Below are positions 20,563 to 53,237 of a DNA stretch of 64,000 bases, in pieces. The DNA lies in the NCBI RefSeq assembly GCF_003918875.1, contig NW_025767086.1:434001-498000 (forward strand), written 5' to 3'. Made by a program: the position numbers and the translations under genes. This DNA comes from Haliotis rubra (lineage: Eukaryota). The notes beneath the pieces were generated by a model, which was given only the letters and a program-made list of their open reading frames with translations, was not told where the DNA came from and did no database searches. Every line of letters begins with the position of its first letter. Within the stretch, counting starts at the first letter, position 1.

Positions 20563-21040
20563 ATGGACATGAACTTGGAAGGATCAAGTGTTGACCCAGA
20601 ACAAATCAAAACTCGCTTCTATGAAGAGAACACCACAGGTGCTACGCAAAGGAACAGCATGGAATACCCCAGTCTGCCGACATCAGACCTTGAATCTGAC
20701 GCTGTGCCATTCTCACCTGAAGTCAATCATGCAGCAGGTATGTTTGGAGACGCAACGACCCACTTGCCAAGAGAGCTAATTGAGGGAACCACAGCACCAC
20801 CGTTAACAGAGCTCCTCGCAGAGTCATCCAGGACAGATCCGAGACATACGGCAGGATATGGTTCTTCCTGTCACCACCCAGATACACATACTCAATCTCC
20901 TGTAGGTAGCCAGTGTGCAGCTCAGCAACCTAAGGTTCCAATACGGAGGGAAACATATTGTCCACCAGCTCAACCAGATCAGCAGTCCAGAGATGCCAAT
21001 CCCCCATCAAGTACACCTGTTCAAGAAGAAACCATGAAAG
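20563..21040 (+). CDS. TIR-1 gene, first coding exon: low-complexity S/P/T/Q/E-rich N-terminus (159 codons)
   Basis: Acceptor ctgacag at 20537, in-frame upstream stop, ATG at 20563, donor AG|gtattt at 21040 (phase 1) joining the TIR exon at 22499 in frame. Confidence 0.7.
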
Positions 21041-21094
21041 GTATTTACTGTTATGAATGAAATAACAAAGACTTGTTGATTCACCTTAGTTGGG

Positions 21095-21620
21095 TTAATT
21101 GTGATGGTGTTGTCTCAGTGGTTGGTTGTTACAGTGTTGTCTCAGTGGTTGGTTGTTACAGTGTTGTCTCAGTGGATTGTTGATTGTGATGGTGTTGTCT
21201 CAGTGGTTGGTTGTTATGGTGTTGTCTCAGTGGATTGTTGATTGTGATGGTGTTGTCTCAGTGGATTGTTGATTGTGATGGTGTTGTCTCAGTGGTTGGT
21301 TGATTGTGATAGTGTTGTCTCAGTGGTTGGTTGTTATGGTGTTGTCTCAGTGGTTGATTGTGATGGTATTGTCTCAGTGGATTGTTGGTTGTTATGGTGT
21401 TGTCTCAGTGGTTGGTTGTTATGGTGTTGTCTCAGTGGCTGGTTGTTATGGTGTTGTCTCAGTGGTTGGTTGTTATGGTGTTGTCTCAGTGGCTGGTTGT
21501 TATGGTGTTGTCTCAGTGGTTGGTTGTGATGGTGTTATCTCAGCGGTTGATTGTGATGATGTTGTCTCAGTGGATGGTTGATTGTGATGGTGTTGTCTCA
21601 GTGGATGGTTGATTGGGATG
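21095..21620. repeat. Intronic minisatellite, 26-30 bp unit (ggtgttgtctcagtggttggttgttat)
   Basis: Direct tandem copies. Confidence 0.95.
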
Positions 21621-21889
21621 GTATGTAAATACTGCTGTTCTACTAATACCGCGGTAAACCGTTTCACCCCTAGTGTTTGTAAACAACTGTTGCTGATGTT
21701 GGACAAAGTAATATTTTGAAACGTGTTTACTATATTGTAATACATGTAATACTCAGAGGTGTTCACATTATGTCTTAAACATCCTTTAGAATGGATGCCA
21801 GGATAACGAAATAGAAGAGGCATCTCCACTATGAATATGCCTAAGAACTTCAGGCTTTACCCCCTTTCCTGTCCTTCAGTGTACAATTG

Positions 21890-22054
21890 GGGCCGTGGGG
21901 TAGCCTAGTGGTCAAAGCGTTGGCTCGTCACACCGAAGACCCGGGTTCGAATCCCCACATGGGTTCAATGTGTGAAGCCCATTTCTGGTGTCCCCCGCCG
22001 TGATGTTGCTGGAATATTGCTAAAAGCGGCGTAAAACCAAACTCAGTCAGTCAG
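21890..22054 (+). mobile_element. tRNA-derived SINE (family A)
   Basis: gtagcctagtggtcaaagcg...ggttcgaatccc head and (cagt)n tail. Confidence 0.88.
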
Positions 22055-22498
22055 TGTACAATTCATGATGTAGCTGGCACTCACTCACTCACTGACTGAC
22101 TGACTAAGACAGTTCCAGACTGACTGTTGTGACCCACCTCTACAGACCGGCAACATGGGGCACCTGCCCACTGTGCTTACAGTGTCTGACTTTCTATGGT
22201 GATTTCCTTGTTCAAAACAAAAAAGCTTAGCATCTGTGTCAAGCAAGGAGTACATGAACATTCAGAACATCTATTATTTTTAAGACTCCATATTTGAATT
22301 TGACATGGAACAAACGATATATGATTAGATTCTTCATAGAATACCACTCACTCTCACAATGATCTTTCATTTCTTTTGCAACATTTTCGTTTTTTAGTGA
22401 ATTTTGTTTAGCTTCTCATCCAGGTTGGGAACCTTGGGCCATGTATTGGTGAAACTCAGTGATCTCAGAAGATTTATTATGATGTGTTTTATCCGCAG

Positions 22499-23010
22499 TG
22501 GACATGCCGGTGCCTGTGAAGTTTGACGCCGTGATCATCTGCCATGAAGACGATGCCCACGAAGTCAACAAACTCAAAGACCACTTGAACAGTCTTGTTT
22601 TGTTTGACGATAAAATGGCCTCCGTTGCCATCGAGGGCGATGGACCTGACTTGGGGAAAGGAGAAGTCACCTACTTTGAGGGTTGGCTAGAAAGTGCACA
22701 AATAATGTTTCTTTTTATGACCAAAGTATTTTGTGAAGAAAGCTTCTGTTGCTATAAGCAGAATATTGCTTTATGTGAATCATTCTTATTTTCAGATAGT
22801 AAAAAGGAATTTGTGATTCCTATTTTCTTGGACAAAAAGCATAATCTGAAGTACTTAAAGCCCTCAATACGAGCAATAAAGGGGATTGAGTACATTGACT
22901 GCAAGTGGAATGACAAAGTAGCAGAGAGATTCAGGAAGAATTTGATCAGTGCTCGACATAAGAGACAAGAAAATCTAGCTGCAAAAATGGCAAATTTGAC
23001 AATTACTTAG
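22499..23010 (+). CDS. TIR-1 terminal exon: TIR domain, TICAM (TRIF/TRAM)-like; predicted protein ~329 aa with the upstream exon
   Basis: FDAVIICHEDD (betaA), GKGEV (BB loop/alphaB), IMFLFMTKVF (betaC), FVIPIF (betaD), IRAIKGI; acceptor ccgcag, phase 1. Confidence 0.85.
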
Positions 23011-24362: not shown

Positions 24363-24622
24363 GGGTGGGGGCACGGTGGGCGAGCTGTCTAAGGCGCCAG
24401 GCTAGTAATCCAGTGAGCTTGGAGGTGCCGGATCGAGCGCACCTGTGACCGGGTGTAAAAACCTTGGAGTCAACTTTGTATGCAGACTCTTTTCAGATTC
24501 TTGTACAACCCCTAGTGTACAGTACAACACCCTGTGCACTTAAAAGAACCCACGAATCCGTTGGTAGATGACCAGATGGTGGCCACATGAATATGTGCAA
24601 ACACCTAGTTGAGGGTACAGCA

Positions 24623-24671
<49 letters not shown>
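24363..24671 (+). mobile_element. tRNA-derived SINE ending in (TG)n
   Basis: ggtgggcgagctgtctaaggcg tRNA-like head, gcacttaaaagaaccca central motif, TG microsatellite 24624-24671. Confidence 0.7.
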
Positions 24672-24672
<1 letters not shown>

Positions 24673-31362: not shown

Positions 31363-32693
31363 ATTTCATAGTGATTCATAAACACATGCTATGTCATCGT
31401 ATTGCTGTCAGGTCCAGACGCGATACAGCTACAATACTGCTGAAACACATATCAGCTCATGACATAGTCACACTTGTACAATCGACTCTGCAATTAGCAG
31501 GGATTTCTTATGAATGTGGAAAGGGTTTTGTCGCTTGTATTTGAAAAACATCACCATGTACCCATTTTATTTAATTACAATCAGTGTCTGGTATCTCTTT
31601 CAATAAAACTTAGCTACAACTGACGAATTGTAGTCAGTACTTTTGTCAGGGAACATATTTTCAAATCACACTGTACATTATTTTGTGTTATCACATCCTC
31701 GTCCGGAAATATTATATCACTGAATCACGCTGAGCATATGCACCTGTGGTACGCTTCATGTGACACTGCTTCGTGTTTTAACCTCCCTATCTCCTATTTT
31801 GTCTCCAAAACACCTTTGGCGATTAAGCTGACATTGTCTATCACTTGCCAGCAATGTCTCCACCTTGCATGGGAAAATCATACTAGAAAGTGTTTCATGT
31901 ATGTTTTAGTTACTGGAATCAAAGACTCACATTCGGTCAAATCTGTTGTTGCTATTGGCCAAGGTATGTACCAGCACTTATTTTGTGAATAGTGGTGACG
32001 TAGATGTGTCTGTCTGTAGAGAAATATATTTTCTCTGTGTCAAATATCATTTTATGCAGGACTCACCTTCGTCCATCTGCATTCCTCAATTGTCATTTTT
32101 ATCATCCCCTAAATACCTTATATTTTTAATGAAATATGATTTGTTTCCTAAATTCCTACAAACGTGGAGGTCATTACTTGTAACCTACAAAACGTTGAAT
32201 AGCATTTCTCCCACACAATTCTAACATTTGAGAAAGCTTTCTGGTTGACGTTTTTTAATACTTTAAGGTCCCCAATGTTGAAAAATACAAAGACCATAGA
32301 TACAATGAACATAAACGCGAAGTATATCATGCTATAAAAATATAACTTTCATTTGTTTCAAAATACCATGAATCGCATTATATATGTGGATGTATTAGGA
32401 TTTACGCAAAATGTAAATACTTAAAACGACATACGACTATTGAGTTTAACAGATAACAGAGATAAAGTACCTGTAACATAAGAAATATATAGTTTTCCTG
32501 TTTTCTCAGAAAGCTTCGAACGGTAACATTACCGTAAAATGGGCGATTGCGATACCATGTACATGACACAGACGTTCGCCAACAACCTGGCAGAGCTAGA
32601 TACCAGTATTTCAAATATGATCAGGCTGAGATGGTTTTCTTATTTGTTAATTCTGAACTAACGCATTTGTTTTTGTCCTACCCTTTTCCTTAG

Positions 32694-33221
32694 CCAACAA
32701 CGTCATCTTCAACCTACCTTCCAGCACTGACCCCGACCCTGGGTTCTCCCATGCCACGTTAGTCTACAGCAAGGATGACGAAGATGACGTAATGGATCTG
32801 CGATCCACCTTGCAGGATCTTCAGCTGTATAATGGGAACAGGGTTAGCGTGGCTTTGGAAGAAGAAATTGTACCTGACGGAGTAACTGAAGTCGAGGCAT
32901 TCGATCAGTGCTTGTTAAAATCTGAGTTAATATTATTATTCATAACAAAGAACTTTGTCGTGTCTCGCCAGGACATTTGGAAGGGTAATGTAACATTAAC
33001 GGATTCGCTTAGTGGTGGTAAAAAAAGTTATTCCCATTTTCACTGAAGATAAATTAAAAGCTACATATCTAGAAGAATGCCACGCTTTTAGATCTATCCG
33101 GGGAATAAATTACCACAACTGTAAATGGAGTAAAGACACAAAGATTGCTTTTCTCAAAAACTTTAATCACATAGAGAAACAGCGCGAAGGACCAGGCAAG
33201 GCGCATGCACGTGATTCTTAG
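32694..33221 (+). CDS. TIR-2 terminal exon: TICAM-like TIR paralog with a +1 frameshift in an A7 run (33020-33026); pseudogene or assembly error
   Basis: Acceptor ttccttag (phase 1). HATLVYSKDD...GVTEVEAFDQC...LLFITKNF...[fs]VIPIF...RSIRGINY..CKW aligns to TIR-1 and TIR-3. AATAAA at 33299. Confidence 0.78.
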
Positions 33222-37200: not shown

Positions 37201-37435
37201 ACACACAGTAATACCAGGACAGGTGACAGGACAGTAATACCAGGACAGGTGACACACATACCAGGACAGGTAATAATACCAGGACAGATGACACACAGTA
37301 ATACCAGGACAGGTGACACACAAATACCAGGACAGGTGACACATTAATACCAGAACGGTTGACACATCAATACCATAACAGTTGACACCTATTAATACCA
37401 CGACAGATGACACATTAACATCAGAACAGATGACA
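34300..37435. repeat. ~3.1 kb satellite, 25 bp unit (acagtaataccaggacag[a/g]tgacac); related diverged copies at 37645-37790
   Basis: More than 100 tandem copies; source of the spurious 400-1000 aa ORFs. Confidence 0.97.
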
Positions 37436-38262: not shown

Positions 38263-38547
38263 TCAATGTAAGATACAGGAAAGTAAAATCCCCACAGTAC
38301 TGGCTACAGTTGCTATGAAGAATAGCACAAGCAGCAGTCTGTCCACCACGACTGCCACCTTCCTCCACTCCTCATCAATGACCCCAGCAGCCTGTTTGTC
38401 GCTGTACCGGCTGTTTATCTCCTTCAGAACGGATAGCTGCTCCTCCAGCACGTGTTTCAATGGCAGTAAATGATGATAGTCGAGCACACCAGTGTCTTGA
38501 GATTCCAAACTAACCATTTCCTTTTGCTTTAACGTGTTGAAATGGTC
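38263..38547 (-). CDS. nAChR alpha subunit last exon (MA helix, TM4, stop)
   Basis: EEWRKVAVVVDRLLLVLF motif; acceptor tttcag, phase 0. Confidence 0.93.
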   Translation of the reverse strand, partial: DHFNTLKQKEMVSLESQDTGVLDYHHLLPLKHVLEEQLSVLKEINSRYSDKQAAGVIDEEWRKVAVVVDRLLLVLFFIATVASTVGILLSCILH

Positions 38548-38970
38548 CTGAAACAATGGAAATTGTAAATTAATCAGGACATAGTAGCTGAATATCTACA
38601 ATATACATGAATCGAATCTAGATTCGGCGTATCAATAAGCCACAACTCCATCTACACTATTAAGACAAGCTTTGCATATTTCGTATATCAAATGAGATTT
38701 TATTTGTATTGGAAGAGCCAATTTGTGCATTTTAACCTAAGATATACTAGTACGTTCTTTCGACAAGTAGTATTTTAAAACTACCCCGTCAGAATGTATA
38801 TATACATGGACCTCTGTTCAGAGATCTCAGATATGTATCTCTGTTTCATTTATTGAGGACCATGTTTCCTTTAATCACAAACATCCATAGGATTACAGAA
38901 CGAAAACTGTTTGAATTAATAGTTATAATGCCTTTCTTGCGTTACCGGTGTGAAACTAGTCTTATCTTAC

Positions 38971-39185
38971 CCTGTGGACGTGACTGTATACGTCCTTTAT
39001 CTTCACTGGGTACACTGCGGGTTCTTTCCTCACACAAAGGAGCTCCGAAAGAGTCCCGAGAAATATCTTCCTAATCCAGTGAGGAACTGGGTCGCCATGC
39101 TGACCGCGGAAGTGCACGTTCAGCACGATCACTGTGAGGGCCGTGGAGAGCGCCACCAGCAGCATTGCCACGCAGAAGTAGATTC
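38971..39185 (-). CDS. nAChR alpha subunit exon (TM3 and start of intracellular loop)
   Basis: GIYFCVAMLLVALSTALTVIVLNVHFRG...VPHWIRKIFL; phase 1/0. Confidence 0.95.
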
Positions 39186-39645
39186 CTGTGGAAGAGAATG
39201 GTATTTAGTTGTCGGAAACTAGTCTTCATGTGTTTGGGAGACAGAGATAAAGAGTTCGCTCGTCACGCCTAAAGCCGGGGTTCCTTTCGAAAAGTAGGAT
39301 ATATAAGGCCCACCATGATTGTGCTGGAACATTGCTAAAAGCGGTGTAAATTCAACTCGCTTAACCTGAATGCGTTACACGATCACGTGACAGGCTGTTC
39401 GTAAAGACGGTATGTGGATTAAAACTAGCATTTTATACAGACCTATCACCTTATATCCACTGGTACTATTACTGTCGCTTTTAACGATCGTATCTGGTTT
39501 AACAGACCTGCCAACAGAACATATTGGGAGATGGGCCAGTCAAACCACTTACTGGCTAAAGCTATAAGGGTCTTCTGTTGTGCATGTCACACACACACAA
39601 TACACGTTTTATCAACCGAGACTGAATGGAGTATTGAGAACATAC

Positions 39646-40181
39646 CTAGGCAAGGAAAGTTGTCCGATGTCGGTGGCAACGACTGCGCCACAAGCAGCAT
39701 GAATACTGACAGCGACAGCAGCATCGTGATCTCTAGCGCAACCTTCTCCCCGGCGTCTGGAGGTAGCAGGAAGCCCAGCAGACCCACAGCAGAGATCAGT
39801 ATACAGGGAAACAGCAGGTTCACGATGTAGAAGAACGGCTTACGTCGCATGGAGATGTAGAACGTCACGTCGGGATAGGGTTCCGGGCAGCAGCTGTAGA
39901 ACTTCTCGTGACGCGCAGCTGGGACACTCAACAGCTCCCACTCTGTGTTGACTTTGTAGTCCGATATATCAGCTGCCTTGTCGCCGATGGTGATGTTGAG
40001 CTGGTGCCCACTGTAGGCCCAGGAACCGAACCGAAGGGCACAGGTTTGACCGTCGAAGGGGAAGTAGGTGACGTCGACAGGACAGAGACTTTTGATGACG
40101 GTGGGGAAGTTGTAACTGGCGGCGCCGTCTGAGGTGAAGGTCGGCCTGTAGTCCTTCAGTCCAATAAGTTCGTCTCCAGCA
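39646..40181 (-). CDS. nAChR alpha subunit exon (Cys loop, loops B/C, TM1, TM2); alpha7/9/10-like
   Basis: CPVDVTYFPFDGQTC Cys loop, FGSWAY, YSCCPEPY vicinal cysteines (alpha type) and GEK before M2; phase 2/1. Confidence 0.97.
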
Positions 40182-40499
40182 CTGGGATGGGTCCAAAAGA
40201 ATTGTTGTTACAGCAACACACATATCTTTTAAGTATGTTGTCATTTACAGAGGTTTGGAAACATGGCGGTCGTCAGTTTGAATGGCTGGTTTCATCGTTT
40301 TTGTTTTTAACCCCGCAATCAGCAATATTCCAGCTATAAAATGGAGATATGTCTGGACCAAGCAATCACATGGGTGACATTTTAAACATCGACTCGTGTT
40401 ACGCTGACATGCTATCAGCTAAGTCTGAGCTCTCTGAGCGACTTGATCCATGTAGTCCCCTCTTGGTATTCTTACCTGGTTTCCTCACGGGTCACTATG

Positions 40500-40864
40500 T
40501 GAGGTGAGGTGGTGAGGTGAAATTGGGTTTAACGTCGTGCTGAAGAATATTTCGCTCATATGACGCCGTGCATGCGAGTGTATGTGTAGGTGCGGCTGCT
40601 TGTACTAGCCCAGACATAAGCTGGTTTTATAGTGCTAGCCTCACTGAGATACAATGCCGCAGTGAAGCATGAATACCCCACTCAGACACATTATACAGAC
40701 TCCGAGCCGACCAGTCCTTGTTGTACCCATTAATGCCGAGCGCCAGGCAGGGACCAACAAGTACCATATTTTAACGTCTTTTGGTATGACGCGGTCGGGG
40801 ATCGAACCCGCGACCTTCCGCTCTCCGGGCGGACGCTCTAACCACTACACCACGGAGGCGGTCG
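40500..40864 (-). mobile_element. tRNA-derived SINE (family C) in a nAChR intron
   Basis: Reverse-complement match to 5794-6080; intact A/B boxes; flanked by the direct repeat gggtcactatgt at ~40489 and ~40864 (candidate TSD). Confidence 0.85.
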
Positions 40865-40916
40865 GGTCACTATGTAAAACAGAGTTACAGAAAGGACTAA
40901 TGTGAATCTCACTCAC

Positions 40917-41026
40917 TTGTCATATAGAGTAATATCTGGAGTCCATACTTTCTTATAGGGAAGGATGAGTTTTGAGATGCCGCCGTACTCGGTGGCGTTC
41001 CAGGTCATCTGACAGTCGTACCAGTT
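40917..41026 (-). CDS. nAChR exon (NWYDCQMTWNATEYGGI...VWTPDITLYD; loop A)
   Basis: WxPDI.LY motif; 110-nt exon, phase 0/2. Confidence 0.95.
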
Positions 41027-41575
41027 CTGCAACAAATATACCACCATAAACACCAATATGTGACAGCGGTCGGGATACCTAGTGCACTCAATGGTAGGGA
41101 GTAGAGGCAACTCTTCGGCTCATTAACTAAGAGTGTAGAATGGAAATAAATATCAACTGTGCAGATAAAGGGTAAAATGTCCAGAAGAGCCTAGAAGGTG
41201 GAGCGGAAGGTTGTGTACTACCAAAATATCTCGTAATTGCTGGAGTGCAAAGGAAAATCACTCTTGGATTTACGACTGTTCATAAGTATTCCACGCCCCA
41301 GATGAACTATGCACCATATATGTAGGCTCTAAAACTCAATAATTCCGCCAAAATACAAAAGACATCCACATTGTCATTTCGCTCTTCTATTCAGATGTAA
41401 GTACGTCCACCGTGGATCAGGGCACAGTATCGTTGAGTTGTCTGTATACCTATCTGAAATCTTTAGGATCTCTCATAGGAAGCACGGATAAGATGTAGGC
41501 AATTACTGGATTGACAAAAGAACCCTTTTACCAACTTGAATGAAAGAATATTCGAGTGACTGATGCAGCACTTAC

Positions 41576-41620
41576 CAATCGGACCCAGACGTTGACAGTC
41601 AATATCTGGCTGGGTTCATC
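41576..41620 (-). CDS. nAChR 45-nt exon (DEPSQILTVNVWVRL; loop D)
   Basis: DE..Q.L..N.W motif; ccag/gtaag boundaries. Confidence 0.92.
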
Positions 41621-42106
41621 CTGGAACAAAATAAAATCTATATTATGATGTCGACTGGAGCTCCAGATTAACGACGAGGATGGTTCAGTTCACCGTATAA
41701 CCTGTCATTATACTGAGATTGTTGTTATATAGTGTTCTGTATAGTCTAAGGAATGTTTTAACATGCACAATCGTGTTTGAACATTTCAGCATGCTATCTT
41801 AATATAAAATGTATCATAATATCACCCTTGTTTCTACTTTTTACTAAAGGAAAATCTACATTCTCTGATGTTTCTTGACATCTCCACATAGTTTGTGTAG
41901 GTTAGAAACATTGTCATGCAAAGGTGAAACGGCATGTCCCCCTCTATATATAAGTTGTTTTTGGAGAATAGTACATTAATCACCAAAGGAATGCTGTCAA
42001 TCTACCTTCGTCTTCCACAATGACATGTAGCACTGCAGTGGCGTGTCAGAAACATTCAACATTCAATATCCCTAAGGTTACAGGGAAACAATACCTATGT
42101 ACTAAC

Positions 42107-42246
42107 CAGCTCCATGATCTGTCTGACAGCGATGCCAACTTTCACCTCTATAGGAGCGTCCTCTTCACAGATTGGCCGCACTTCTTTCTTGTACTTGGCA
42201 AACAGCTTGTCCAGTAGTGCTCGTTGGTGGGCGTCGAGACCTGCTA
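42107..42246 (-). CDS. nAChR exon encoding the mature N-terminus (AHQRALLDKLFAKYKKEVRP...QIMEL); signal-peptide exon not located
   Basis: L...LF..Y...VRP motif; 140-nt exon, phase 1/0. Confidence 0.9.
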
Positions 42247-43482
42247 CTGTAAGAAATGTTGATGTACATAATCGACGTAATACTGGAGGACAGTACCTAG
42301 TATGTCCTGAATATATAGAATAATACAGATCAGGTATATACATTCCCGCAGATGTGTCAATACTATAACTATATATCAAATCGCACATGAACAATGAAAA
42401 CCACAATAATTGATTGTTCTTTAGGCCAACATGTCATACAATACACACTTGTACTTGCATAATATATTTTACGCATGTGCACTCATGATAGTTCGATGGA
42501 TCTTTAACATAAATAATGTTTTCTTACTGATGGATAGACAAATGGATCTTATGTCGTAACAGATGATAACATTAGAGGGAACGCGGATATCGTATATCAT
42601 TATATAGTGGACACAGCAGGTGTACAATCATCATGTTCTTCACCTTCAGAAATAGATCATTCGTTACAAATATTCTTACTGCATACGGTACATACAACTT
42701 TACTCGGTTTCTCAGCGCCTATTGTATTGTATCCACTTAAGCAAAGAAGAAAAAGCCTCTTCATTACTTCTAACTTTCTTTAAAATCACTGTCACTTCAA
42801 CAAACGTTAACGATGAACTAATGATTTTGTAACCCAGTCGTGTTTATAACCATCAATCTTTGTTTGAAGATAACAAGCAACAGAGATGTTGCCCTGACAT
42901 TTAGAACAATCCATACCTCGACAAAACCATACAAGCAAAGAAACTATCTGATATGTTCAGCCTAATTTGTTATATTGCCGGTTTGTTTCTGACTATCATT
43001 GAAATGGATGCCTTGAAATTATGCAATTCACATAAAGGGAAATTGCTTTCCCACAGTCACACTATGTGAAAAGGTTTGGTAACTGAAAGCTACTATTTGA
43101 TACAAATTTACGGACATATTGGTGGACAGCTTACATAATTCAAAATCGGTAAACCTGTTGAGTTGGCGCTGTCTTACAAAATACTACTTTGATGATACAA
43201 AATGCAAAACTTATCAACTTTCTCTAAAACTAAACTCTGTAAGACTGAAACATGGATTTTTATTACTAATAAATAACCTTCAACGAAAGACTGTTTTACG
43301 TTCAACATTCACCAAGACGATTGTTGACGAGTTTGATCATGTAAAAGATGAAGCACTTGAATCCGGTGTCTATTCGTTATATGGGACACAGGGCGACACA
43401 TTTCTTTCTTCAAATTGTACTATCATCAAGTTCATGATAGAACATAGTTCGGTCATCGCCAACTGGATGTTACTGATCCAAG

Positions 43483-43553
43483 TTAGTTAGTTAGCCTTTT
43501 AAGTTAGTTAGTTAGCCTTTTAAGTTAGTTAGTTAGCCTTTTAAGTTAGTTAG
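43483..43553. repeat. Short ~21 bp tandem repeat (agttagttagttagcctttta) x3
   Basis: Direct repeats. Confidence 0.8.
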
Positions 43554-46500
43554 CCTGTTTGTTCAGATGTGGCCTGTAATTGATTGTCGTCAGATCTATG
43601 TTGAGCTGTGGCTAGAACTAAAATCTGATCTGCAAAATTTACAGGGTTACAACATGAATGACTAAGTCAAGTTTTCCCGAAACGTTTTTGGTAGGCATGT
43701 TGAGAACATTCCAGATGTGACCCACCAATGACCAAATGCGATTCCCAATTATAATGTGTACCACATGAGATTGTACATATCAACACTTGGTCTGTTTTAT
43801 TGTTATGTTAGAGACATAAGTGCACGATGAGTTGTCTACACTATTGCTTCACAACCCAATCAGGATATACATTAAAATTGAAACGTCTCATCATAATAGA
43901 ATGGAACAGGTTGTCATCCATTAAATATCCTGTCTTCAATGATGCCTTTAGCTACTGTGTGGAAGACACCCTTGCATACTACCGCTCCCAAAACGTGGAT
44001 CAAGACACGGGACGCTGAAGACCTATGCTTGGAAAGAGTTGTTCGTATTCTGTACTCAGCGTCGCCTGACACATGTTGCAGATATGACAATGGATACGAC
44101 AGTGTTATACTCACCAAGTAGTCCGATGAATATTACCAATGCTAAGCGAGCCATTTCAGTTTGTGTATGTATCTGTCCCGACCTCACCAAATGTCCTGAG
44201 ACAAGTAATAACCAAACAGATTGTGCCCCAGCTGTTGAAGGGAAGGGAGTTATCGTTACTAATCACTTCACTGTCAGGTAGTTCAGCCAACCAAGTGGGC
44301 AACATGAGACTATTCGGCCTCTAATTATCCCCTTTGTTATGCAAAGTTTGTGTGAAGGTGTTAATTGGCAGACTGTGAGTACTACCAACAGAGGCGACAT
44401 GCAAAGGTTGAATACTAATTAAACAATGCTCTGAACAATAAGCATCACAGTGGCATACAGATGTCTCAATGCTTGGATGATCATAGAACAGTAGCTTCCA
44501 AAAGGTTGTGTCAGCAATATACTGCTCATTGTCCTACAACAAACAAATGTCGGACTTCGCCTCCGGCTATGTGAAAAGACTGATTGAGCTAACGTTGCAG
44601 ATGTACCTAACCAATTTCGATGTTTTTCTTTCTTATTTAAGCATTGTTTAATTTGATCCCTTTGGAAATAGATAACGTTATGTCTTCACTAAATTCATAA
44701 CGAATAAGTATACTGAAGAGCTAACGTTGGTACAGAGAAGACGTGGTGAGCCATAGGAGTGTTGTTGTAATTACCTTTACCGTTGGCTGTATGAGTATCA
44801 CTTTCCAACCGTAGTGACTCATCGGAGACGGGAATAATCGGTAAAAGATATATTTTTATTGAATCATTATTTTTGATATGTTATTCCCGTTTTTCATATA
44901 AGGCATTGTATTAAAAAAACACAGTGCCCTCATTGAACACGTGGATGTTAGTTACTGGGTTTAAAAAATAATAGAAATACATATATCACATGAAAATAAT
45001 TTAGTTATTCTGTTTTCTTCATATGAATGACGACTGAACATATGTAGTTAAAGGGTGGCTTCAGTGTCTACTGGACACATCTACACGTTGGTCAAGGGGT
45101 AATGTTAGTGTGAACAGGGATTCATATCCGTAGGAAGGTCAAGTAGATGTTGCCTCGGGTCATCGTAATGATCACATGAGGAAAGGCAATGCACTTTCTC
45201 CTATTAAGAAACCAAATTTACACATTCTGAAATTAAAGTATGCGGGCGAGAAAAGCGTCCAAATGATATTTTGAAAGGTAGATTGTCATATTTCATTGGG
45301 CCAGAAATGAAAGTTACTCGTACAGGGCTACAGTGTTACCCGACTCGATCAAAACAAATCGACAAAGGGTTGAACGTCTGGGGATTAACGTCCTTGAAAG
45401 AAGGATTAAAGGTGTACTAAGCCAGCGGTAGACACCCGTCGATTTAAATGACATAGACCAAAGACAATAAAATAATAAAAAAACATCGAACTAATTTACG
45501 TACATAATACTATATCGTCTGTCTTTTCAGCTACATCTATAGTATTTTATATAACTGAACTTTTTTCCTTATTGGTACCACTTTATTATGTGTATATTTT
45601 AATACGTTTTTAGATACGTTTATGTCATATTCCTATAATGTTTTAGTATTTTAGTATTTATTTGTCTCTCGTAAATCGTTGGGCAATTGGCTGTGTGTGT
45701 TTTTATAACTACGTTGTATGTACATATTTTATGAACTGTAATATGTACACAAGTGATTCCATGAGAGAATATTTAAAACAACACGAAACTGCAATGGAAT
45801 CATGTGCGAAATACGTATTATGTCGAAAAGCGCACGTTAAATCTCCAAATCATCATCATCATCATGCAATGGAAGTAATTATTGTTTACCTCCCACTTGT
45901 CTGATACATGCTTGTCTGACAGCCGAACCTGCTCCTGTGGAAGCAGTCGAGAGGATCCCTTTCATTACTTCCTTCAGTGACCTCTGTATGATAGATTCAG
46001 ATTTAACAAATACTTTTTCAAAATAATGTAAGTTTACATGCTATTCTAATCTTTGTTTCAGTATTAAAGCGAATTGATAATAAAATCTGTCTAGAAGTTC
46101 TTGAATGATGCCAACCGTTTTTCATTAAGTGTGGTACCATATGTTGTATTTAGTTTGAATTTATTGAATCATGAAAACATTTGTCTGCGCATTTTCTATA
46201 TTTCCATAAATGTATTAATAAACCAATAATTTTGTAAAAACCATTTAAATGATTAATAAAAAAATAAATTTAAAAAAATAAAATAAATAAACCCATTCGT
46301 CAAGTTTAGGAGAAGCACTTATATAGGCTGATGCAGCCTGTTTGCTGATCCGTTTTCCTTTTGTATTTATTATTCTTTATTGTATATCATATGGCTGTCG
46401 GGGAATAAAATACTTTAAATCAATTAATGTTTACGTATTGAAGTTGAATCTGGCCATCTGGGTATGTACGTACATTTAGGATAAGTGAGTAAGACTTTTA

Positions 46501-47585
46501 AAACCGGCATTCGCCTCAAGATCCTTATTCTAAAACTGAATGTGTAAATCCATTAGACGTAAGTTCATGTTCGTAAGTTTGCAACCAACAAAGAGACGCA
46601 TAGTTGTGTTCTCACTTACACTACTCTATTTCTTTATTACAGAGTGATTCTTTCAGTATTATTTGGAAAGACCAGAGGATTCTGTTGCAGCGAAAAGTCG
46701 GAGCACTTTTGTGGTTGTTTTATTTGTTTGGTTTGCTTTGCTGGGAGTGTGTTTTGGGCTTGTTGTTTTGTCTTCTTTATACTTTTTTGGTTATGACCAA
46801 TTAGATTGTTTTGTTGTTCTTTTATTTAATGGAGCGAGGTGGGTGCGTTTTACAGAATTTAGACTGATCGAGACGAAAACGACTGTTGGTAATTTTGGAT
46901 ATCACACCCATCACCACCAGAGGAAACCGTTCCCAGGGATAGTCTATTAGACTACTGTATAGTCCCTGAAAATGATATTTTGAATAGGAGGCCCGGAAAG
47001 ATTGTTGGTTCAGAACCTGTGGAAAATCTAAGAGTTGTTTGTTTCTTTGTATATACCTGACACGGGAAAGCCGCTTCAAACGTAGATGTTGCCTCGCTTT
47101 GATTGGTTGATACAGTTTGTGCTAAAAATGCCGTGATCTGATTGGCTAATTAAAAATAACTCGATGGTAACGTGAAAAGTGGATATCGGAGGCTGGGGCA
47201 ATTGGGAAACCCCAATGCTAAGAATAGACACGAGGTAAAATCTGGTTTTGAAATACAGCTTTGATTTTTAAAAGGTGTCATTGAAAAGGGAATCCTAACT
47301 AAGTGCAAACATTTTCGGAAATGCACCTGTCCTTCTTGGCTCATGCAGACATAATGCCATCTCAGGCGTCTGTATTCATCATGTCAAAGTATCGAGTGAA
47401 TATCTTGAAAGGCATTTATTATTAGAAGGTGGACGATGTATTATAATTAATTGTTTCGGCCTCCAAATAAGTTAGTAGGTTGAGAGGGATTACAAACTAT
47501 TCATATGGGAACACATGCTCACTAAACAATTATTAAAGCAAGAGAGTCGAGTTGGATATTTGCTTCACTTAAAGCTCTGCCTTCT

Positions 47586-48272
47586 ATAACCCAGTACAAT
47601 AATGACGTATTTGAGACACCATTCTTCATGCCATAACCCGGTACAATAATGACGTATTTGAGACACCATTCTTCATGCCATAACCCAGTACAATAATGAC
47701 GTATTTGAGACACCATCCTTCATTCCATAACCCAGTACAATAATGACGTATTTGAGACACCATCCTTCGTGCCATAACCCAGTACAATAATGACGTATTT
47801 GAAACACCATCCTTCATTCCATAACCCGGTACAATAATGACGTATTTGAGACACCATCCTTCATTCCATAACCCGGTACAATAATGACGTATTTGAGACA
47901 CCATGCCATAACCCGGTACAATAATGACGTATTTGAGACACCATCCTTCATGCCATAACCCAGTACAATAATGACGTATTTGAGACACCATCCTTCATTC
48001 CATAACCCAGTACAATAATGACGTATTTGAGACACCATCCTTCATTCCATAACCCAGTACAATAATGACGTATTTGAGACACCATCCTTCATTCCATAAC
48101 CCAGTACAATAATGACGTATTTGAGACACCATCCTTCATTCCATAACCCGGTACAATAATGACGTATTTGAGACACCATCCTTCATGTCATAACCAGTAC
48201 ATATAATGACGTATTTGAGACACCATCCTTCATTCCACAACCCGGTACAATAATGACGTATTTGAGACACCA
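47586..48272. repeat. Minisatellite, 47 bp unit, ~15 copies (ataacccagtacaataatgacgtatttgagacaccatccttcattcc)
   Basis: Period 47 measured between 47586 and 47633. Confidence 0.95.
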
Positions 48273-48350
48273 AAGTTAGATGTTCTTACATGTACATATT
48301 GTAACTACCTACTGCTCCATATGTCTGAAATAAAGCCAATGCGACGTTAT

Positions 48351-48374
48351 TCTCTCTCTGTCTCTCTCTCTCTG

Positions 48375-48432
<58 letters not shown>
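48351..48432. repeat. (CT)n microsatellite
   Basis: Direct reading. Confidence 0.95.
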
Positions 48433-48436
<4 letters not shown>

Positions 48437-49690
48437 AATAATGTTTAACGACATTCTAATGAGATTTTCTGTTTATCAGAATAAACTGTATCTGATAATT
48501 CATTATTACTCCTTGCACAAATTTTCACATTTGCATATATGCTCCGCAGTAATTTTCCCATTTTGCGACTGGCACCATGCTTGTCTAAGAGATTCCATAG
48601 TTTGTTCCTGTTTATTGAATCGAACGCCTTGGAAAAATCTACAAATAAGACATAGAATTTTTGTCCCTTTTGATTAAGATATTTCTGAATAATAGAATGT
48701 AAAACAAATATGTTATCAATAGTAGCGTATCCCTTCCTAAAGCCAGCTTGTGATTCTGTTATCTTGTCTAGAGTATCTGCCCATTTAACTAACCTCTTAT
48801 TTATGGTAGATGTAAATATTTTGCTAAATATGCTTAATAACGTTATGCCCCTATAATTTTCAGGATTGTTTACGTCTCCGTTCTTATGTATAGGAACTAT
48901 TATGCCAGTGGACCATTTATTCAAATTCAAACAATCCAAATGGGTACGGAAAATAATGTTTAACGACATTCTAATGAGATTTTCTGTTTATCAGAAGAAC
49001 GTTTCTTCAGTCCAGTGTTATGGATAATGTTTTTTGTTATAAAACAATTGTCAATTCGTTGTGTGAGGGCTTAATATACAGCCTTGTCTGACTCCTAATT
49101 GGCTCAGAAATGTATCTGATAATTCATTATTACTCCTTACACAAATTTTCACATTTGCATATATGCTCCGCAGTAATTTTCCCATTTTGCGACTGGCACC
49201 ATGCTTGTCTAAGAGATTCCATAGTTTGTTCCTGTTTATTGAATCGAACGCCTTGGAAAAATCTACAAATAAGACATAGAATTTTTGTCCCTTTTGATTA
49301 AGATATTTCTGAATAATAGAATGTAAAACAAATATGTTATCAATAGTAGCGTATCCCTTCCTAAAGCCAGTTTGTGATTCTGTTATCTTGTCTAGAGTAT
49401 CTGCCCATTTAACTAACCTCTTATTTATGGTAGATGTAAATATTTTGCTAAATATGCTTAATAACGTTATGCCCCTATAATTTTCAGGATTGTTTACGTC
49501 TCCGTTCTTATGTATAGGAACTATTATGCCAGTGGACCATTTATTCAAATTCAAACAATCCAAATGGGTACGGAAAATAATGTTTAACGACATTCTAATG
49601 AGATTTTCTGTTTATCAGAAGAACGTTTCTTCAGTCCAGTGTTATGGATAATGTTTTTTGTTATAAAACAATTGTCAATTCGTTGTGTGA
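48432..49690 (-). mobile_element. Tandemly duplicated non-LTR (RTE-X/CR1-group-like) RT fragment, period 623 bp
   Basis: PIHK.GD...NYRGITLLS..SK, QAGFR, FVDFSKAFDSI and GVRQGCILSP motifs; two near-identical copies. Confidence 0.9.
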
Positions 49691-51389
49691 CTGTTAGTGC
49701 CTTCGATCCCGAAATTTCATAGTGTCGGTATCACAAGTTCTCACCTACGCTTTTGCAGTTCTTATCTCCCCTTAAATAAGCTATGGTCGATAGGTGTCGC
49801 GGTTAAGTGACTGTAATATGGCGTAATAAGGGAACTGCCTCCTTTCTGTTTAGAAGGCGGTAATTCACAGAAGTATTTTTTACGTGTTCATGTAAAACTG
49901 CTTGTTATTCATTTGTTTATTATCATAATATGCACTCGAATAACTAACTATTTAAAATATGTTTGCATTTCGAGGACTATTGCACCAAATACATAATCTA
50001 TTGGAAGACAAACTTGGCCCAACTAGGCCAGCACTGGGCAAGTTAATTTATTTTTCCTTACTTGTACTCAATCGACTAAGAGTCGTGATGAGATAACAAA
50101 ATGTTTTATTCACTTCTTCTTCCTCTGTAGCCATTCAGCTAAATATGATGGTTAGCATTTCGGCTAAATCAGTTGTTAATGAGATGAGATGTCTACACTG
50201 GGTATTGTTTTGGAGTATGGAGGGTATTACTTACAACTCTGATATATATAAAAAATATAGTGCTACTGAACCATACAACATGATGTTTATACACACTCAT
50301 ACACATCCTCAAACAAAGCAATGCATAATGTTGTGATATGGGTCTGTTAACTAATGGTGGATATTATATAGGTTAGTTGTAACATGAAATACACAATGCC
50401 CAAATATAACATATGTTATATGGTTTAAGAAAGCTCCGACACTTATTCTTCCACTTGTTATAATGGAGGTTATGCGGGAGTGTGTACATTAACTCTCTTC
50501 AATCACTTAGGCCACTATGGGGCGGTAGGTAAGGCGTTCCCTGTCGCTATGTTGCTGGGATATTGTTGAATGCCGTTCAAAATCATGAGTCACTCAAGGC
50601 TATAAGTCACATCAAGATTGGGAACACCGGAAATGATGGCCATTCACTGTACTCATGAGGAAATCAGGGCTTGATATCCTCGATGACAAGTTTTGTCGGT
50701 AGCTGACGCGTTCGCAAAAAGAACAGCAACACCATATAATGCACAATGTATTTTATTCGCAATACTTTAAGCATGGGCGGATACAGAGAGGAATGCAGAG
50801 GTGCGCACGCACGCTCGCACACACAGACACAGACACACCATTTCCTCATCTCCAGGGATATCCGTCCCTGTTAAGGCTATCACTTGTTTATGGTAAATCC
50901 ACATTCAACATCCATTTAACCATGGTGTACATGCCTGATAATATTTTCATATTGTTTGTTTTTTCTACATGAAAATGACTTTTTATTACAACTGAATATG
51001 CTACTTTGATGTGTTATGTAGAAACACAGACTGTGGTTGATAGTTGTATGCAGTCATGAATCATAAGGGAAATATATACTATTTCAATGAATGTCCCCAA
51101 ACCCCTTCAGTAGTAGGACTTTGAAGTGTGTGATAGCCGGCTCCGTGTCCTAGTAATAACGTGAACCACAGCAGGAAATCCGGCAGTGATGCTGAAATAG
51201 TCCACTATACGCGGAACACCTACAGTATATATAGTAAATTAAGGATGGATGGTGCTCGCGTGCATGGGAAGATAAGCGGACTGTTGCGGACCCCGGAGAT
51301 AGATAGCATTACTTCCATGTGAATACTTTAATACCAGGATTTCTTACATCCCACATCCCACATCCCGTAACCGTAGCACATAGGACACG

Positions 51390-52296
51390 ATGAATAATAC
51401 ATAGATGATATTTTGTTAATGTTGTCAAATAACATGTATATTTCATCGAGTGGTCTGACAAAGTTGATATGTTCACGAGTGGCGCAGCGAGACCACGAGA
51501 TGAAATATACATGTTATTTGACAACGTTAACAAAATATTCTATTTATTCTATTTTATATTATATACTACACATCAAAAGTTTGGACTCACTTAAAACACT
51601 CACTACAAAAATGGTTACATCGAATATGGATTTCTCCACTAACTTGGGGGAACCAACTGCAAACCTTATGCAGATGAACTGCATGAGGGTCATGCATCAA
51701 ATTGCTGAAAAGCATGTGCAAATATCATGCAATGTGAACAGCTGCGTTTTGGTGTAAAGTTTTGTTAAGAATTCGCCAATTTTTCAGTTTCATCATTTAT
51801 TGAACTCATGACAATAATCTTTTCAACGTTACGAATTTGTTTTACAATACATCAGTTCATGTGAAAACAGTACCTTTAAACAATATGGAATATTCTGCAA
51901 ATCCAGTTTAAAACAGTTGACAGCAGTAAGTGGCTAAATTTACATTTGATGGGTAGTATATTAATGATAAAATATCATCTCTGTCGCAAGGGAGGTAATT
52001 CTTTAATCAGAAAGTAGTTTCAGGCAAAAGTGATATTCTACTCAGTGAAATATGGAATATTTTGCAAAATCTAGTTTAAAACAGTTGACAGCAGTAAGTG
52101 GCTAAATTTACACCAGTGAGTCTAAACATTTGACGGGTAGTATATTTATGATAAAATATCATCTCTGTCGCAAGGGAGGTAACTCTTTAATCAGAAAGTA
52201 GTTTCAGGCAAAAGTGATATTCTACTCAGTGAAATATCATGTTATTCTACTATATTCACCAATATTTACAGTATTTCACCCTAAGAATATAATAAA
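51390..52296. mobile_element. Non-autonomous element with a 5' palindrome (51408-51538) and an internal ~170 bp direct duplication
   Basis: atattttgttaa...gtatatttcatc / gatgaaatatac...ttaacaaaatat inverted repeat; ~51880-52050 repeated at ~52050-52236. Confidence 0.55.
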
Positions 52297-52692
52297 TATT
52301 TCATATTTTCCTTGCATGTGCGTTGTTTTTTGCCAGATTAATAATGTGTTTAATGTCAGCAGCAATTTTGGGATGGGAAGAATGCGTTTAGTTGAGAAAC
52401 ATTTTATATATTATACGATCAGCTCATGAAAATTATGTCGAGAAGCGAGTGATGAAAACTCTGTTTCATGATAAGCGATCTGTGCCTTTGACGATATCGT
52501 ATAATGTTCTCTGTGCATACAGTTGCAGGTCTTCAGTATTTATGTTAATTTTAAAAGTTGAACTAGTATGTAAGCACTCTGTGCCGACAGGAGGTAAGCA
52601 TGCATATTTACGATTCCAAGAAGGATCTTGTTTCTGGATGCATTTCCATACCAGGAATGTCAATTACATTATTCGTGTATTTTTTGTTTCAG

Positions 52693-53237
52693 GTAAGCAA
52701 TCATCCCCCAACAGCCCCGTGCAGACGAGGGAAGCACACCTCAGGGTCTACCACGCTGTGATAATATACGATGAGGCTGACAAAGACAAAGTCTTAACTC
52801 TACAAACGGATTTAAACAGTATAGTTCTTGGTAACGGTGTACACGCGAATGTGGCACTACTGGATGACGTACAAAGTGACGGAGAAACAGAAGTAGCATC
52901 ATTCGATCAGTGTTTCCAAAAATGTGTCTTAATGTTTTTGTTTATATCGGAACCGTTTATGAAAAACGTCTATGAGAGATGGAGATATGAAGTTGGACTG
53001 ACTGAGTCCTTGAAATATGGGTCTCGTATAGACGGTAGACCTTTTGTTATTCCAGTTTTCACTGACAACAAAGACACAGCAAGCTATCTAAGAGATAAAC
53101 CTATACTTAGAGCTGTTTGTGGTATCAAACATCACGGCTGTACAGGGAAAAAGTCAGTGGACATTAGGTTCCGCAGAGACTTGGAGGAGGCAGAACAAAG
53201 AAGGCAAATAAAACTAAATGGCACTACCGTGGATTAA
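52693..53237 (+). CDS. TIR-3 terminal exon: TICAM-like TIR paralog, intact
   Basis: Acceptor ttttgtttcag (phase 1). YHAVIIYDEAD...GETEVASFDQC...MFLFISEPF...FVIPVF...LRAVCGI aligns to TIR-1 and TIR-2. AATAAA at 53692. Confidence 0.85.

What the first reader, a model, noticed from the sequence alone, without database searches (positions are those of the whole stretch)
20563..53237. Three paralogous TICAM (TRIF/TRAM)-like TIR domains in an invertebrate locus
Seen: three plus-strand exons (22499-23010, 32694-33221, 52693-53237) align along their whole length. Shared blocks are [D/H]A..hxxxD, G.[G/T]EV..F, hFLFhT/S..F, L.[E/D]S, VIP[I/V]F, YL and R[A/S][I/V].GI....C. Established knowledge, recalled: vertebrate TRAM/TRIF TIRs read FVILHAEDD...GRGEL/GRQHL...LLLTENF...VIP...ALQTINAL, which fits these better than MyD88 or TLR TIRs (YDAFxSY...DRD..PG). 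TICAM adaptors are known from chordates and are absent from fly and worm. Inference: a locally expanded, diverged family of TICAM-like adaptors in a probable mollusc could mark an uncharacterised MyD88-independent innate signalling module.
Basis: partly seen in the sequence, partly recalled or inferred. Interest (0 to 1): 0.75.

Follow-up and report, generated by a model that had tools for sequence, protein, structure and literature searches.

The report
Abalone TRIF/TRAM-like TIR adaptor cluster
Three neighbouring abalone genes encode signalling (TIR) domains whose closest known relatives are the vertebrate Toll-receptor adaptors TRIF and TRAM; they belong to an unnamed family found across molluscs, a brachiopod and a ribbon worm, although this adaptor type is described as chordate-only in the papers searched here.

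Summary
In this Haliotis rubra window, three plus-strand exons (22499-23010, 32694-33221, 52693-53237) are paralogues (BLASTP E 9e-26 to 7e-11). All three start after an AG acceptor in phase 1. Copy 2 carries a one-base frameshift in an A7 run (33020-33026).

About 160 cluster representatives form an unnamed family in gastropods, bivalves, a chiton, a brachiopod and a nemertean. Long members carry a RHIM after the TIR, which is the TRIF architecture. Many members also carry an N-terminal motif, (L/V)xxD|A(V/A)P, that matches the caspase-cleavage/IAP-binding site of insect IMD.

Gene 1 (20563-23010, LOC124287711) has this motif (LESD|AVPF). In RNA-like runs of a close relative it is covered on exons only, by contigs that skip the intron. 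The window genes lack a RHIM, so they resemble short, TRAM-like adaptors or regulators.

Orthology to chordate TICAM, and all function, remain untested.

The parts
20563..21040 (+). Gene 1 (LOC124287711, 329 aa), exon 1: ATG plus a Pro/Ser/Thr/Gln-rich N-terminal region of 159 codons and one extra base
   Evidence: ORF. It matches P0176 exactly up to residue 159, and a GT donor follows 21040. RNA-like contigs of a relative cover 20536-21040.
20689..20712 (+). Motif LESD|AVPF: candidate caspase site followed by a candidate IAP-binding neo-N-terminus (IMD-like)
   Evidence: Coordinates. The block SMEYPxLPTSDLExDAVPFSPEV is nearly invariant between H. rubra and H. asinina, in an exon that is only 66% identical overall. 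The motif occurs upstream of the TIR in 31 of 104 family members, against 0.98 expected from shuffles. Insect IMD sites are LEKD/A, LETDA and LTTDA (PMC6626034).
21016..21033 (+). PVQEET just before the TIR: candidate TRAF-binding motif (weak lead)
   Evidence: Coordinates. Similar motifs are SVQEET in H. asinina and PIQET / PIQES in the two Gigantopelta-clade sequences P0006 and P0009. It is not enriched family-wide. The TRAF consensus is from memory.
21041..22498 (+). Intron 1 of gene 1 (GT..AG). It holds a 27-nt tandem repeat (21099-21611) and a very high-copy repeat (about 21890-22100).
   Evidence: Splice sites. Exon-only coverage in runs X8, X10 and X11 versus full coverage in DNA-like run X3. 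Repeat.
22499..23010 (+). Gene 1 exon 2: TICAM-like TIR domain with a long C-terminal helix, then the stop codon
   Evidence: Family profile E 3.5e-40. AlphaFold model m3ab777bf3c97 has pLDDT 91.5 and a TIR fold. dN/dS against H. asinina is 0.31.
31910..31963 (+). Upstream coding exon of the copy-2 gene (..KDSHSVKSVVAIGQ)
   Evidence: AG acceptor and GT donor. It is exon 2 of NCBI model P0001, and the same ..AIGQ|AN.. junction is present in the intact H. asinina protein P0005.
32694..33221 (+). Copy 2 TIR exon, frameshifted in this assembly
   Evidence: Profile E 1.5e-21 for the N part and 3e-7 for the C part, in two different frames. dN/dS against H. asinina is 0.53 and 0.38.
33020..33026 (+). 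A7 homopolymer that breaks the copy-2 reading frame
   Evidence: Sequence. H. asinina reads ..GDGKKVIPIFTEDK.. in one frame.
52693..53237 (+). Copy 3 TIR exon: open frame, phase-1 acceptor, own upstream exons unknown
   Evidence: Profile E 5.9e-35. Acceptor. A 61%-identical open homologue, P0002, exists elsewhere. Copy 3 groups with copy 2 in the tree.
38263..58026 (-). Context: nicotinic-receptor-type ion-channel subunit gene on the other strand. Copy 3 lies inside its span.
   Evidence: Gene call and Pfam families. Exon Pfam hits.

Best explanation
The three exons encode TIR domains of a tandem cluster of short adaptor-type genes. They belong to a lophotrochozoan family whose TIR is most similar to those of chordate TICAM2/TRAM and TICAM1/TRIF.

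The family's full-length form has three parts: an N-terminal disordered region with an IMD-like caspase-site/IAP-binding motif, a TICAM-like TIR, and a coiled-coil-rich tail containing a RHIM. The window genes are RHIM-less derivatives.
- Gene 1 keeps the N-terminal motif plus the TIR, and appears transcribed and spliced in a close relative.
- Copies 2 and 3 are sister TIR-only genes. Copy 2 is broken by one base in this assembly.

Shown: paralogy, TIR fold, closest-to-TICAM ranking, family distribution, RHIM in long members, motif enrichment, an intron-skipping joint for gene 1, and purifying selection.

Inferred mechanism: the TIR joins activated Toll-like receptor TIR assemblies and/or the long TRIF-like paralogue, much as TRAM bridges to TRIF. 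A caspase-8-type protease then cuts gene 1's product after LESD. The new AVPF end recruits a BIR-domain ubiquitin ligase, as in fly IMD, which feeds NF-kB-type signalling. The TIR-only copies would act as bridging or dampening partners.
For: Paralogy.

Sequence profiles: TICAM-only hits. TICAM2 and TICAM1 lie 12-17 bits above MAL and more than 20 bits above MyD88. The long-clade profile gives TICAM2 4e-10. The full profile gives TICAM2 4e-20, TICAM1 1.5e-12, MyD88 6e-7. The short and long clades are homologous: hhalign 99.5%, E 2.8e-23.

Family: 162 representatives at E<=1e-3. 79 of 143 reach Pfam TIR_2 at E<=0.01.

Taxa: Haliotis, Gigantopelta, Patella, Lottia, Batillaria, Elysia, Mytilus, Sinanodonta, Potamilus, Mactra, Liolophura, Lingula and Lineus. 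None carries a TICAM name: most are 'uncharacterized', 'hypothetical' or 'TIR domain-containing', and two bear unrelated automatic names.

RHIM: the core tetrad lies downstream of the TIR in 16 members, against 2.4 expected. A profile of these segments hits RIPK3 (1.9e-5) and RIPK1 (0.01) RHIM structures. Pfam RHIM is the best hit in 6 of the 13 members checked, up to 19.8 bits.

IMD-like motif: 31 of 104 members against 0.98 expected. It is spread over several clades and two phyla.

Expression: contigs in runs X10 and X11 join 21040 to 22516 and leave the intron uncovered.

Constraint: dN/dS 0.31 for the gene 1 TIR.

Synteny: H. asinina has gene 1, an intact copy 2 and the ion-channel gene in the same order.
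Against: - Pfam gives no TIR hit for the window copies themselves.
- Structural ranks are tied within 1 Z among TRIF, MyD88 and a Hydra TIR. Foldseek ranks MyD88 first.
- The language-model scores for TICAM2 and TIRAP are nearly equal.
- The canonical BB-loop Pro-Gly, needed for TRIF/TRAM signalling, is not conserved: copy 1 has DLG, copy 2 PDG, copy 3 SDG.
- No TRIF N-terminal domain was found in the ten long members scanned. The pLxIS motif is not enriched. Gene 1 has no myristoylation signal.
- The window genes have no RHIM.
- No chordate TICAM sequence could be placed in a tree, so exclusive common ancestry is untested.
- The expression evidence comes from assembled contigs of a related species, in runs whose RNA status is a guess.
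- Copies 2 and 3 were not checked for expression.
- Caspase cleavage, IAP binding and receptor binding are all untested.
Confidence: 0.7

Rival explanations
1. They are lineage-specific 'orphan' TIR-only proteins with no special kinship to TICAM. The TICAM-like scores would reflect shared loss of the box-2 RD motif and a long alpha-C helix. They would act as generic decoys that dampen MyD88 signalling.
For: TIR phylogeny is notoriously shallow. Structural scores do not separate TRIF from MyD88. TIRAP is almost tied in the language-model search. The BB-loop Pro-Gly is absent. An oyster TIR-only MyD88 variant is described as a pathway 'plug' (PMC7381170).
Against: Three independent profiles rank TICAM2 and/or TICAM1 first by wide margins. 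The family's long members share the TIR-then-RHIM order of TRIF and amphioxus TICAM.
Confidence: 0.17
2. Only gene 1 is a working gene. Copies 2 and 3 are decaying duplicates: a frameshifted pseudogene, and an exon stranded inside another gene's intron. The NCBI chimera reflects that decay.
For: A7 frameshift in copy 2. No upstream exon of its own is known for copy 3, and it lies inside the ion-channel gene span. The NCBI model needs a non-GT donor. No copy 3 lies within 10 kb downstream of copy 2 in H. asinina.
Against: Copy 2 is intact in H. asinina, with dN/dS 0.38-0.53. A single-base homopolymer error is a common assembly artefact. Copy 3 keeps an open frame across the whole 544-base exon and a good acceptor, and it has an open 61%-identical homologue elsewhere.
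Confidence: 0.3
3. The domains are enzymatic, NAD+-cleaving TIRs like SARM1 or bacterial and plant TIRs, rather than scaffolds.
Against: In the family consensus the residue at that alpha-C position is not the same in half the members. With the vetigastropod profile, no enzymatic TIR appears at all up to E 10. With the long-clade and full profiles, bacterial TIRs score only E 0.0013-0.56, far below TICAM. The residue-level equivalence to the catalytic Glu was not tested.
Confidence: 0.05

Closest known systems
TICAM2 / TRAM (vertebrate TIR-only bridging adaptor)
   Same: Best sequence match for every profile, and first named cluster in the language-model search. The alpha-C pattern D-x-W-x-x-F-x-x-x-x-x-L-M has the same spacing. 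The window genes are likewise short, with a TIR at the C-terminal end and no RHIM.
   Different: No N-terminal myristoylation signal in gene 1. No BB-loop Pro/Cys-Gly. About 17-18% identity. Gene 1 has an IMD-like motif that TRAM is not known to have. Orthology is untested.
TICAM1 / TRIF (vertebrate TIR + RHIM adaptor)
   Different: No TRIF N-terminal domain. pLxIS is not enriched. The window genes themselves have no RHIM.
Amphioxus bbtTICAM
   Same: An invertebrate TIR adaptor said to resemble both TICAMs, signalling to NF-kB through a RHIM without interferon (PMC6043800). The long lophotrochozoan members share the TIR-plus-RHIM design.
   Different: It is a chordate protein.
Drosophila/insect IMD
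   Same: N-terminal (L)xxD|A(A/V)P motif. IMD has LEKD|A; dipterans LETDA; beetles LTTDA. Abalone has LESD|AVPF; the two Gigantopelta-clade sequences have LETD|AAPY and LTTD|ALPS. In flies, cleavage exposes an IAP-binding end that recruits Diap2.
   Different: IMD has a death domain and no TIR. Here a TIR replaces it. Cleavage and IAP binding are untested.
MAL / TIRAP and MyD88
   Same: Same TIR fold, and also adaptors. TIRAP is near-tied in the language-model search.
   Different: Profile scores are much lower: MAL 0.012 and MyD88 1.2, against TICAM2 7e-8. No death domain, and no PIP2-binding motif was looked for.

Membership tests
TIR domain superfamily | Flavodoxin-like alternating strand/helix fold that superposes on solved TIR domains | tested here: met
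TIR domain superfamily | Match to the curated Pfam TIR models | tested here: inconclusive
   The window copies give no hit at E<=10. 79 of 143 family members hit TIR_2 at E<=0.01.
TICAM (TICAM1/TRIF and TICAM2/TRAM) | TIR sequence closer to TICAM TIRs than to any other TIR family | tested here: met
   tested against PDB sequences only, which hold every human TIR adaptor returned in these searches and many receptor TIRs.
TICAM (TICAM1/TRIF and TICAM2/TRAM) | Monophyly with chordate TICAM in a TIR tree | not tested
TICAM (TICAM1/TRIF and TICAM2/TRAM) | BB-loop motif E-D-F-x-x-P-G (TRIF group; PMC7075850) with the signalling-critical Pro/Cys before Gly | tested here: not met
   Copy 1 reads EGDGPDLG, copy 2 EEEIVPDG, copy 3 LDDVQSDG. 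The acidic start and the Gly are kept, but no residue pair Pro-Gly is present.
TICAM1 / TRIF | RHIM C-terminal to the TIR | tested here: not met
   No RHIM anywhere in the window. It is met in long family members from Lingula, Haliotis cracherodii, Lottia, Patella and bivalves.
TICAM1 / TRIF | TRIF N-terminal helical domain (Pfam PF17798) | tested here: not met
   No hit in gene 1 exon 1 or in ten long members.
TICAM1 / TRIF | pLxIS motif for IRF3 recruitment | tested here: not met
   15 members carry the loose pattern downstream of the TIR, against 24.7 expected.
TICAM2 / TRAM | N-terminal myristoylation signal MGxxxS/T | tested here: not met
   Gene 1 starts MDMNLEG. Three relatives (P0017, P0049, P0053) do start with MGxxxS/T.
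TICAM (functional) | Binds TLR TIRs and drives MyD88-independent NF-kB/IRF activation | not testable with these tools
   Needs co-immunoprecipitation and reporter assays.
IMD-type caspase-activated IAP-binding adaptors | N-terminal (L/V)xxD|A-(V/A)-P-x motif | tested here: met
   LESD|AVPF at 20689-20712. Family enrichment 31 of 104 against 0.98 expected.
IMD-type caspase-activated IAP-binding adaptors | Death domain; cleavage by a Dredd/caspase-8 protease; BIR binding | not testable with these tools
   No death-domain hit in Pfam. Cleavage and binding need experiments.

The most novel reading that the evidence does not exclude
Lophotrochozoans have a TRIF/IMD hybrid adaptor family: an IMD-type caspase-cleavage/IAP-binding motif, then a TICAM-like TIR, then a RHIM. 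If so, the TRIF-RIPK1-caspase-8-IAP axis of vertebrates and the IMD pathway of insects would descend from one ancestral bilaterian module coupled to Toll-like receptors. Abalone would additionally have evolved RHIM-less, TRAM-like short paralogues (this cluster), one of which still carries the cleavable IAP-binding end.
Probability: 0.35. Interest if true: 0.9.

Novelty: new variant of a known kind. Interest (0 to 1): 0.75.

Why it matters
Reviews and immunome surveys state that TRIF/TRAM-type adaptors arose in chordates and that invertebrates lack a MyD88-independent Toll pathway (PMC6043800, PMC9334734, PMC7075850, PMC7381170). Molluscs nevertheless have many Toll-like receptors (PMC6043800) and, from general knowledge, very many IAPs and an interferon-like antiviral response whose wiring is unknown.

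A conserved TICAM-like TIR family with a RHIM and an IMD-like motif gives concrete candidate genes for that missing branch. It links the vertebrate TRIF pathway and the insect IMD pathway, and it can be tested directly in abalone or oyster cells. Abalone and oysters are farmed species that suffer viral mass mortalities.

Tried and rejected
- Pfam on the raw exons gave nothing.
- The first AlphaFold run, with six sequences, was poor (pLDDT 55) and was not used.
- Word-index searches found only four to nine close relatives because of the length window.
- SEFIR was rejected (E 0.33).
- TRAF6 motif P-x-E-x-x-(aromatic/acidic): not enriched, 6 against 9 expected. The strict P[IVL]QE[TSED] pattern occurred once against 0.16 expected. 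Both are kept only as a weak lead for the short clade.
- pLxIS: not enriched.
- A RHIM and a fourth TIR copy in the window: none found.
- Nearby earlier findings of this scan: none at this place.
- Tassia et al. 2017 (PNAS) was not held in the library. Gerdol et al. 2017, on bivalve TIR families, was not looked up directly; an 'ecTIR-DC' search returned only papers citing it. Prior description of this family there cannot be excluded.
- A second language-model search for copy 3 failed because the server was busy.
The A7 frameshift and the expression of copies 2 and 3 were therefore not checked.


Full report
**What is in the window**

The window is Haliotis rubra contig QXJH01000405.1; window coordinate = locus L001 coordinate + 20214. 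Each lies directly after a pyrimidine tract and AG, and each begins in codon phase 1. This explains why translation from the first base shows stops, while the correct frame gives a 170-aa ORF, a split ORF and a 178-aa stretch.

The copies are clearly paralogous:
- copy 1 vs copy 3: 33% over 162 aa, E 9e-26
- copy 2 (N part) vs copy 3: 40% over 90 aa, E 2e-21
- copy 2 (N part) vs copy 1: 30% over 93 aa, E 7e-11

A six-frame scan of all 64 kb with the family profile finds these three copies and nothing else.

**Gene models**

Gene 1 is NCBI LOC124287711 (329 aa, P0176). Its exon 1 is 20563-21040, its GT..AG intron is 21041-22498, and its exon 2 is 22499-23010.

Copy 2 has an upstream exon at 31910-31963 and its TIR exon at 32694-33221. 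A run of seven A at 33020-33026 shifts the frame.

NCBI's LOC124287712 (P0001, 287 aa) avoids the frameshift by joining the N-terminal half of copy 2 to copy 3. It does so through a donor after 32903 that is not GT. I take this model to be an artefact.

In Haliotis asinina the same neighbourhood holds the gene 1 orthologue (329 aa), an intact 198-aa copy-2 gene and the same ion-channel gene. No copy 3 is seen within 10 kb downstream of copy 2 there. dN/dS between the two abalones is:
- gene 1 TIR exon: 0.31
- gene 1 exon 1: 0.67
- the two halves of copy 2: 0.53 and 0.38

Copy 2 has therefore been under constraint for most of that time. The extra A is either recent or an assembly error.

Copy 3 lies on the opposite strand inside the span of a nicotinic-receptor-type gene (38263-58026). 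It keeps an open frame and a good acceptor, and it has an open 61%-identical homologue in another data set. In the family tree, copies 2 and 3 are sisters and copy 1 is a separate lineage.

**Expression**

Assembled contigs of four public runs of a close relative were laid on 20400-23200. Three small runs (X8, X10, X11; guessed to be RNA) cover only the two exons, apart from a high-copy repeat in the intron. A fourth run (X3) covers the intron as well.

Single contigs in X10 (631 nt) and X11 (1980 nt) run from 21040 directly to 22516. Eleven record letters lie between, where H. rubra has 17. That is an in-frame six-base difference. The gene therefore appears transcribed and spliced as modelled, with the N-terminal motif and the TIR on one RNA. 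The weaknesses are that these are contigs, from another species, in runs whose RNA status is not on record. Copies 2 and 3 were not tested.

**What the domain is**

Pfam sees nothing in the exons themselves, but profiles do.

| Profile | TICAM2 | TICAM1 | Next best |
|---|---|---|---|
| 6 abalone sequences | 1.5e-3 | 3e-4 | none at E<=10 |
| 13 sequences, abalone/Gigantopelta clade only | 7e-8 | 2.7e-6 | MAL 0.012; TLR5 0.85; MyD88 1.2 |
| 19 long relatives (separate set) | 4e-10 | 0.75 | bacterial TIR 0.01 |
| 143 sequences | 4e-20 | 1.5e-12 | MyD88 6e-7; MAL 3e-6; TLR2/TLR15 3e-5 and weaker; SEFIR 0.33 |

The smaller profiles contain no possible chordate sequence, so the ranking is not circular.

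So the fold is certainly TIR. The sequence evidence points specifically to TICAM. Structure agrees but cannot discriminate.

**The family**

An exhaustive profile search found 162 cluster representatives at E<=1e-3. 79 of the 143 aligned domains reach Pfam TIR_2 at E<=0.01. The short (abalone) and long clades are homologous: hhalign 99.5%, E 2.8e-23.

Named members come from these groups:
- gastropods: Haliotis, Gigantopelta, Patella, Lottia, Batillaria, Elysia
- bivalves: Mytilus, Sinanodonta, Potamilus, Mactra
- a chiton: Liolophura
- a brachiopod: Lingula
- a nemertean: Lineus

Most are labelled uncharacterized, hypothetical or simply 'TIR domain-containing'. Two carry unrelated automatic names ('daf-12-interacting protein 1-like' and 'Transmembrane emp24 domain-containing protein 7').

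Two further features emerged from the full-length proteins.

The first is a RHIM.
- The core tetrad lies downstream of the TIR in 16 members, against 2.4 expected from shuffles (maximum 7 in 300).
- Its context is typical of a RHIM, for example IINIYNSSGIQIGNHNTAVV in Lingula.
- A profile of these 16 segments hits the RHIM amyloid-core structures of RIPK3 (E 1.9e-5) and RIPK1 (0.01) as its top five PDB matches.
- Pfam RHIM is the best or only hit in 6 of the 13 members checked. The best score is 19.8 bits, against a cut-off of 20.

TIR followed by RHIM is the arrangement of TRIF and of amphioxus TICAM (PMC6043800).

The second is a short N-terminal motif, (L/V)-x-x-D-A-(V/A)-P.
- It is present in 31 of 104 members, against 0.98 expected (maximum 4).
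- It is spread over several clades and both Mollusca and Brachiopoda.
- It matches the caspase-cleavage/IAP-binding site of insect IMD: LEKD/A in Drosophila, LETDA in other dipterans, LTTDA in beetles (PMC6626034).
- In IMD, cleavage by Dredd exposes an IAP-binding end that recruits Diap2 for K63 ubiquitination (PMC8738736).
- Abalone gene 1 reads LESD|AVPF (20689-20712). This block is almost invariant between two abalone species, inside an otherwise fast-evolving exon.
- A Patella member also carries an XAF1-like zinc finger.

No paper in the searchable library links an IAP-binding motif with an invertebrate TIR adaptor.

**How it most likely works**

The steps shown are the TIR fold, the TICAM-like sequence, family membership, the intron-skipping joint for gene 1, purifying selection, and the presence of the motif.

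The rest is inferred. The window genes lack the RHIM, so they resemble TRAM relative to TRIF. They would be short TIR proteins that join receptor or long-adaptor TIR assemblies. Gene 1 may additionally be cut after D46 by a caspase-8-type enzyme. Its AVPF end would then recruit a BIR ubiquitin ligase. Copies 2 and 3 would be bridging or dampening partners.

Points against strict TICAM membership:
- No Pro-Gly in the BB loop.
- No TRIF N-terminal domain.
- No pLxIS enrichment.
- No myristoylation signal in gene 1.
- No tree with chordate TICAMs.

**Rivals**

- Generic orphan TIR decoys: about 0.17.
- Copies 2 and 3 are dead duplicates: about 0.3. This is compatible with the main reading for gene 1.
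- NADase TIRs: about 0.05.

**Novelty**

The literature available here states that TICAM arose in chordates and that molluscs lack it. The only hints otherwise are a 'weak TRAM hit' in Mytilus (PMC3308963) and a TICAM2 label in a scallop pathway cartoon. Tassia 2017 was not held, and Gerdol 2017 was not looked up directly, so prior description cannot be excluded.

I class this as a new variant of a known kind. It is a TICAM-like adaptor family outside chordates, with an added IMD-like motif, and here in a RHIM-less, tandemly duplicated form.

I did not test it. If real, it would supply possible RHIM partners.

Noticed in passing
window 38263-58026 (-): A Cys-loop (nicotinic-receptor-type) ion-channel subunit gene of 445 aa. 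Its large introns hold TIR copy 3 on the other strand, plus reverse-transcriptase fragments. In H. asinina the orthologous gene spans only about 4.7 kb.
   Followed up: partly
window 34298-37433: A 25-nt minisatellite of about 130 copies. It produces spurious 600-1000 aa Cys/Val-rich ORFs on the minus strand.
   Followed up: partly
window 21099-21611 and about 21890-22100: Intron 1 of gene 1 holds a 27-nt tandem repeat and a very high-copy dispersed repeat. The dispersed repeat reaches summed contig depths of hundreds of thousands to ten million in all four runs, including the RNA-like ones.
   Followed up: no
window 48445-48969 and 49051-49593 (-); 47582-48272: Two near-identical partial reverse-transcriptase ORFs (Pfam RVT_1, E 7e-22) lie next to a 47-nt tandem repeat.
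   Followed up: partly
window 7353-10345 (-) and 13593-14102 (-): A retroelement-like 725-aa ORF, and an acidic ORF that may belong to an Mpp10 gene. An Mpp10 gene lies upstream of the gene 1 orthologue in H. asinina.
   Followed up: no
window 30215-53237 (+), NCBI LOC124287712: The RefSeq model fuses half of TIR copy 2 with copy 3 across 20 kb, using a donor that is not GT (after 32903) and a GC donor after exon 1. It is probably an annotation artefact caused by the A7 frameshift.
   Followed up: partly
family members P0090 (Lingula), P0022 (H. cracherodii), P0049 (Lottia), P0017, P0033, P0087, P0101: These full-length relatives combine all three elements: the IMD-like motif, the TICAM-like TIR and a RHIM. 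The abalone long form is annotated 'daf-12-interacting protein 1-like', which looks like a misnomer.
   Followed up: partly
P0016 (Patella vulgata) residues 2-29; P0017, P0049, P0053 N-termini: One relative starts with an XAF1-like TRAF-type zinc finger (29 bits, above the cut-off). Three relatives start with MGxxxS/T, the myristoylation consensus that TRAM uses.
   Followed up: no
L002 (H. asinina CM074528.1): Synteny is conserved: gene 1, an intact 198-aa copy 2, then the ion-channel gene. No third TIR copy was detected within 10 kb downstream of copy 2, so copy 3 may be absent or lie elsewhere in that species.
   Followed up: partly
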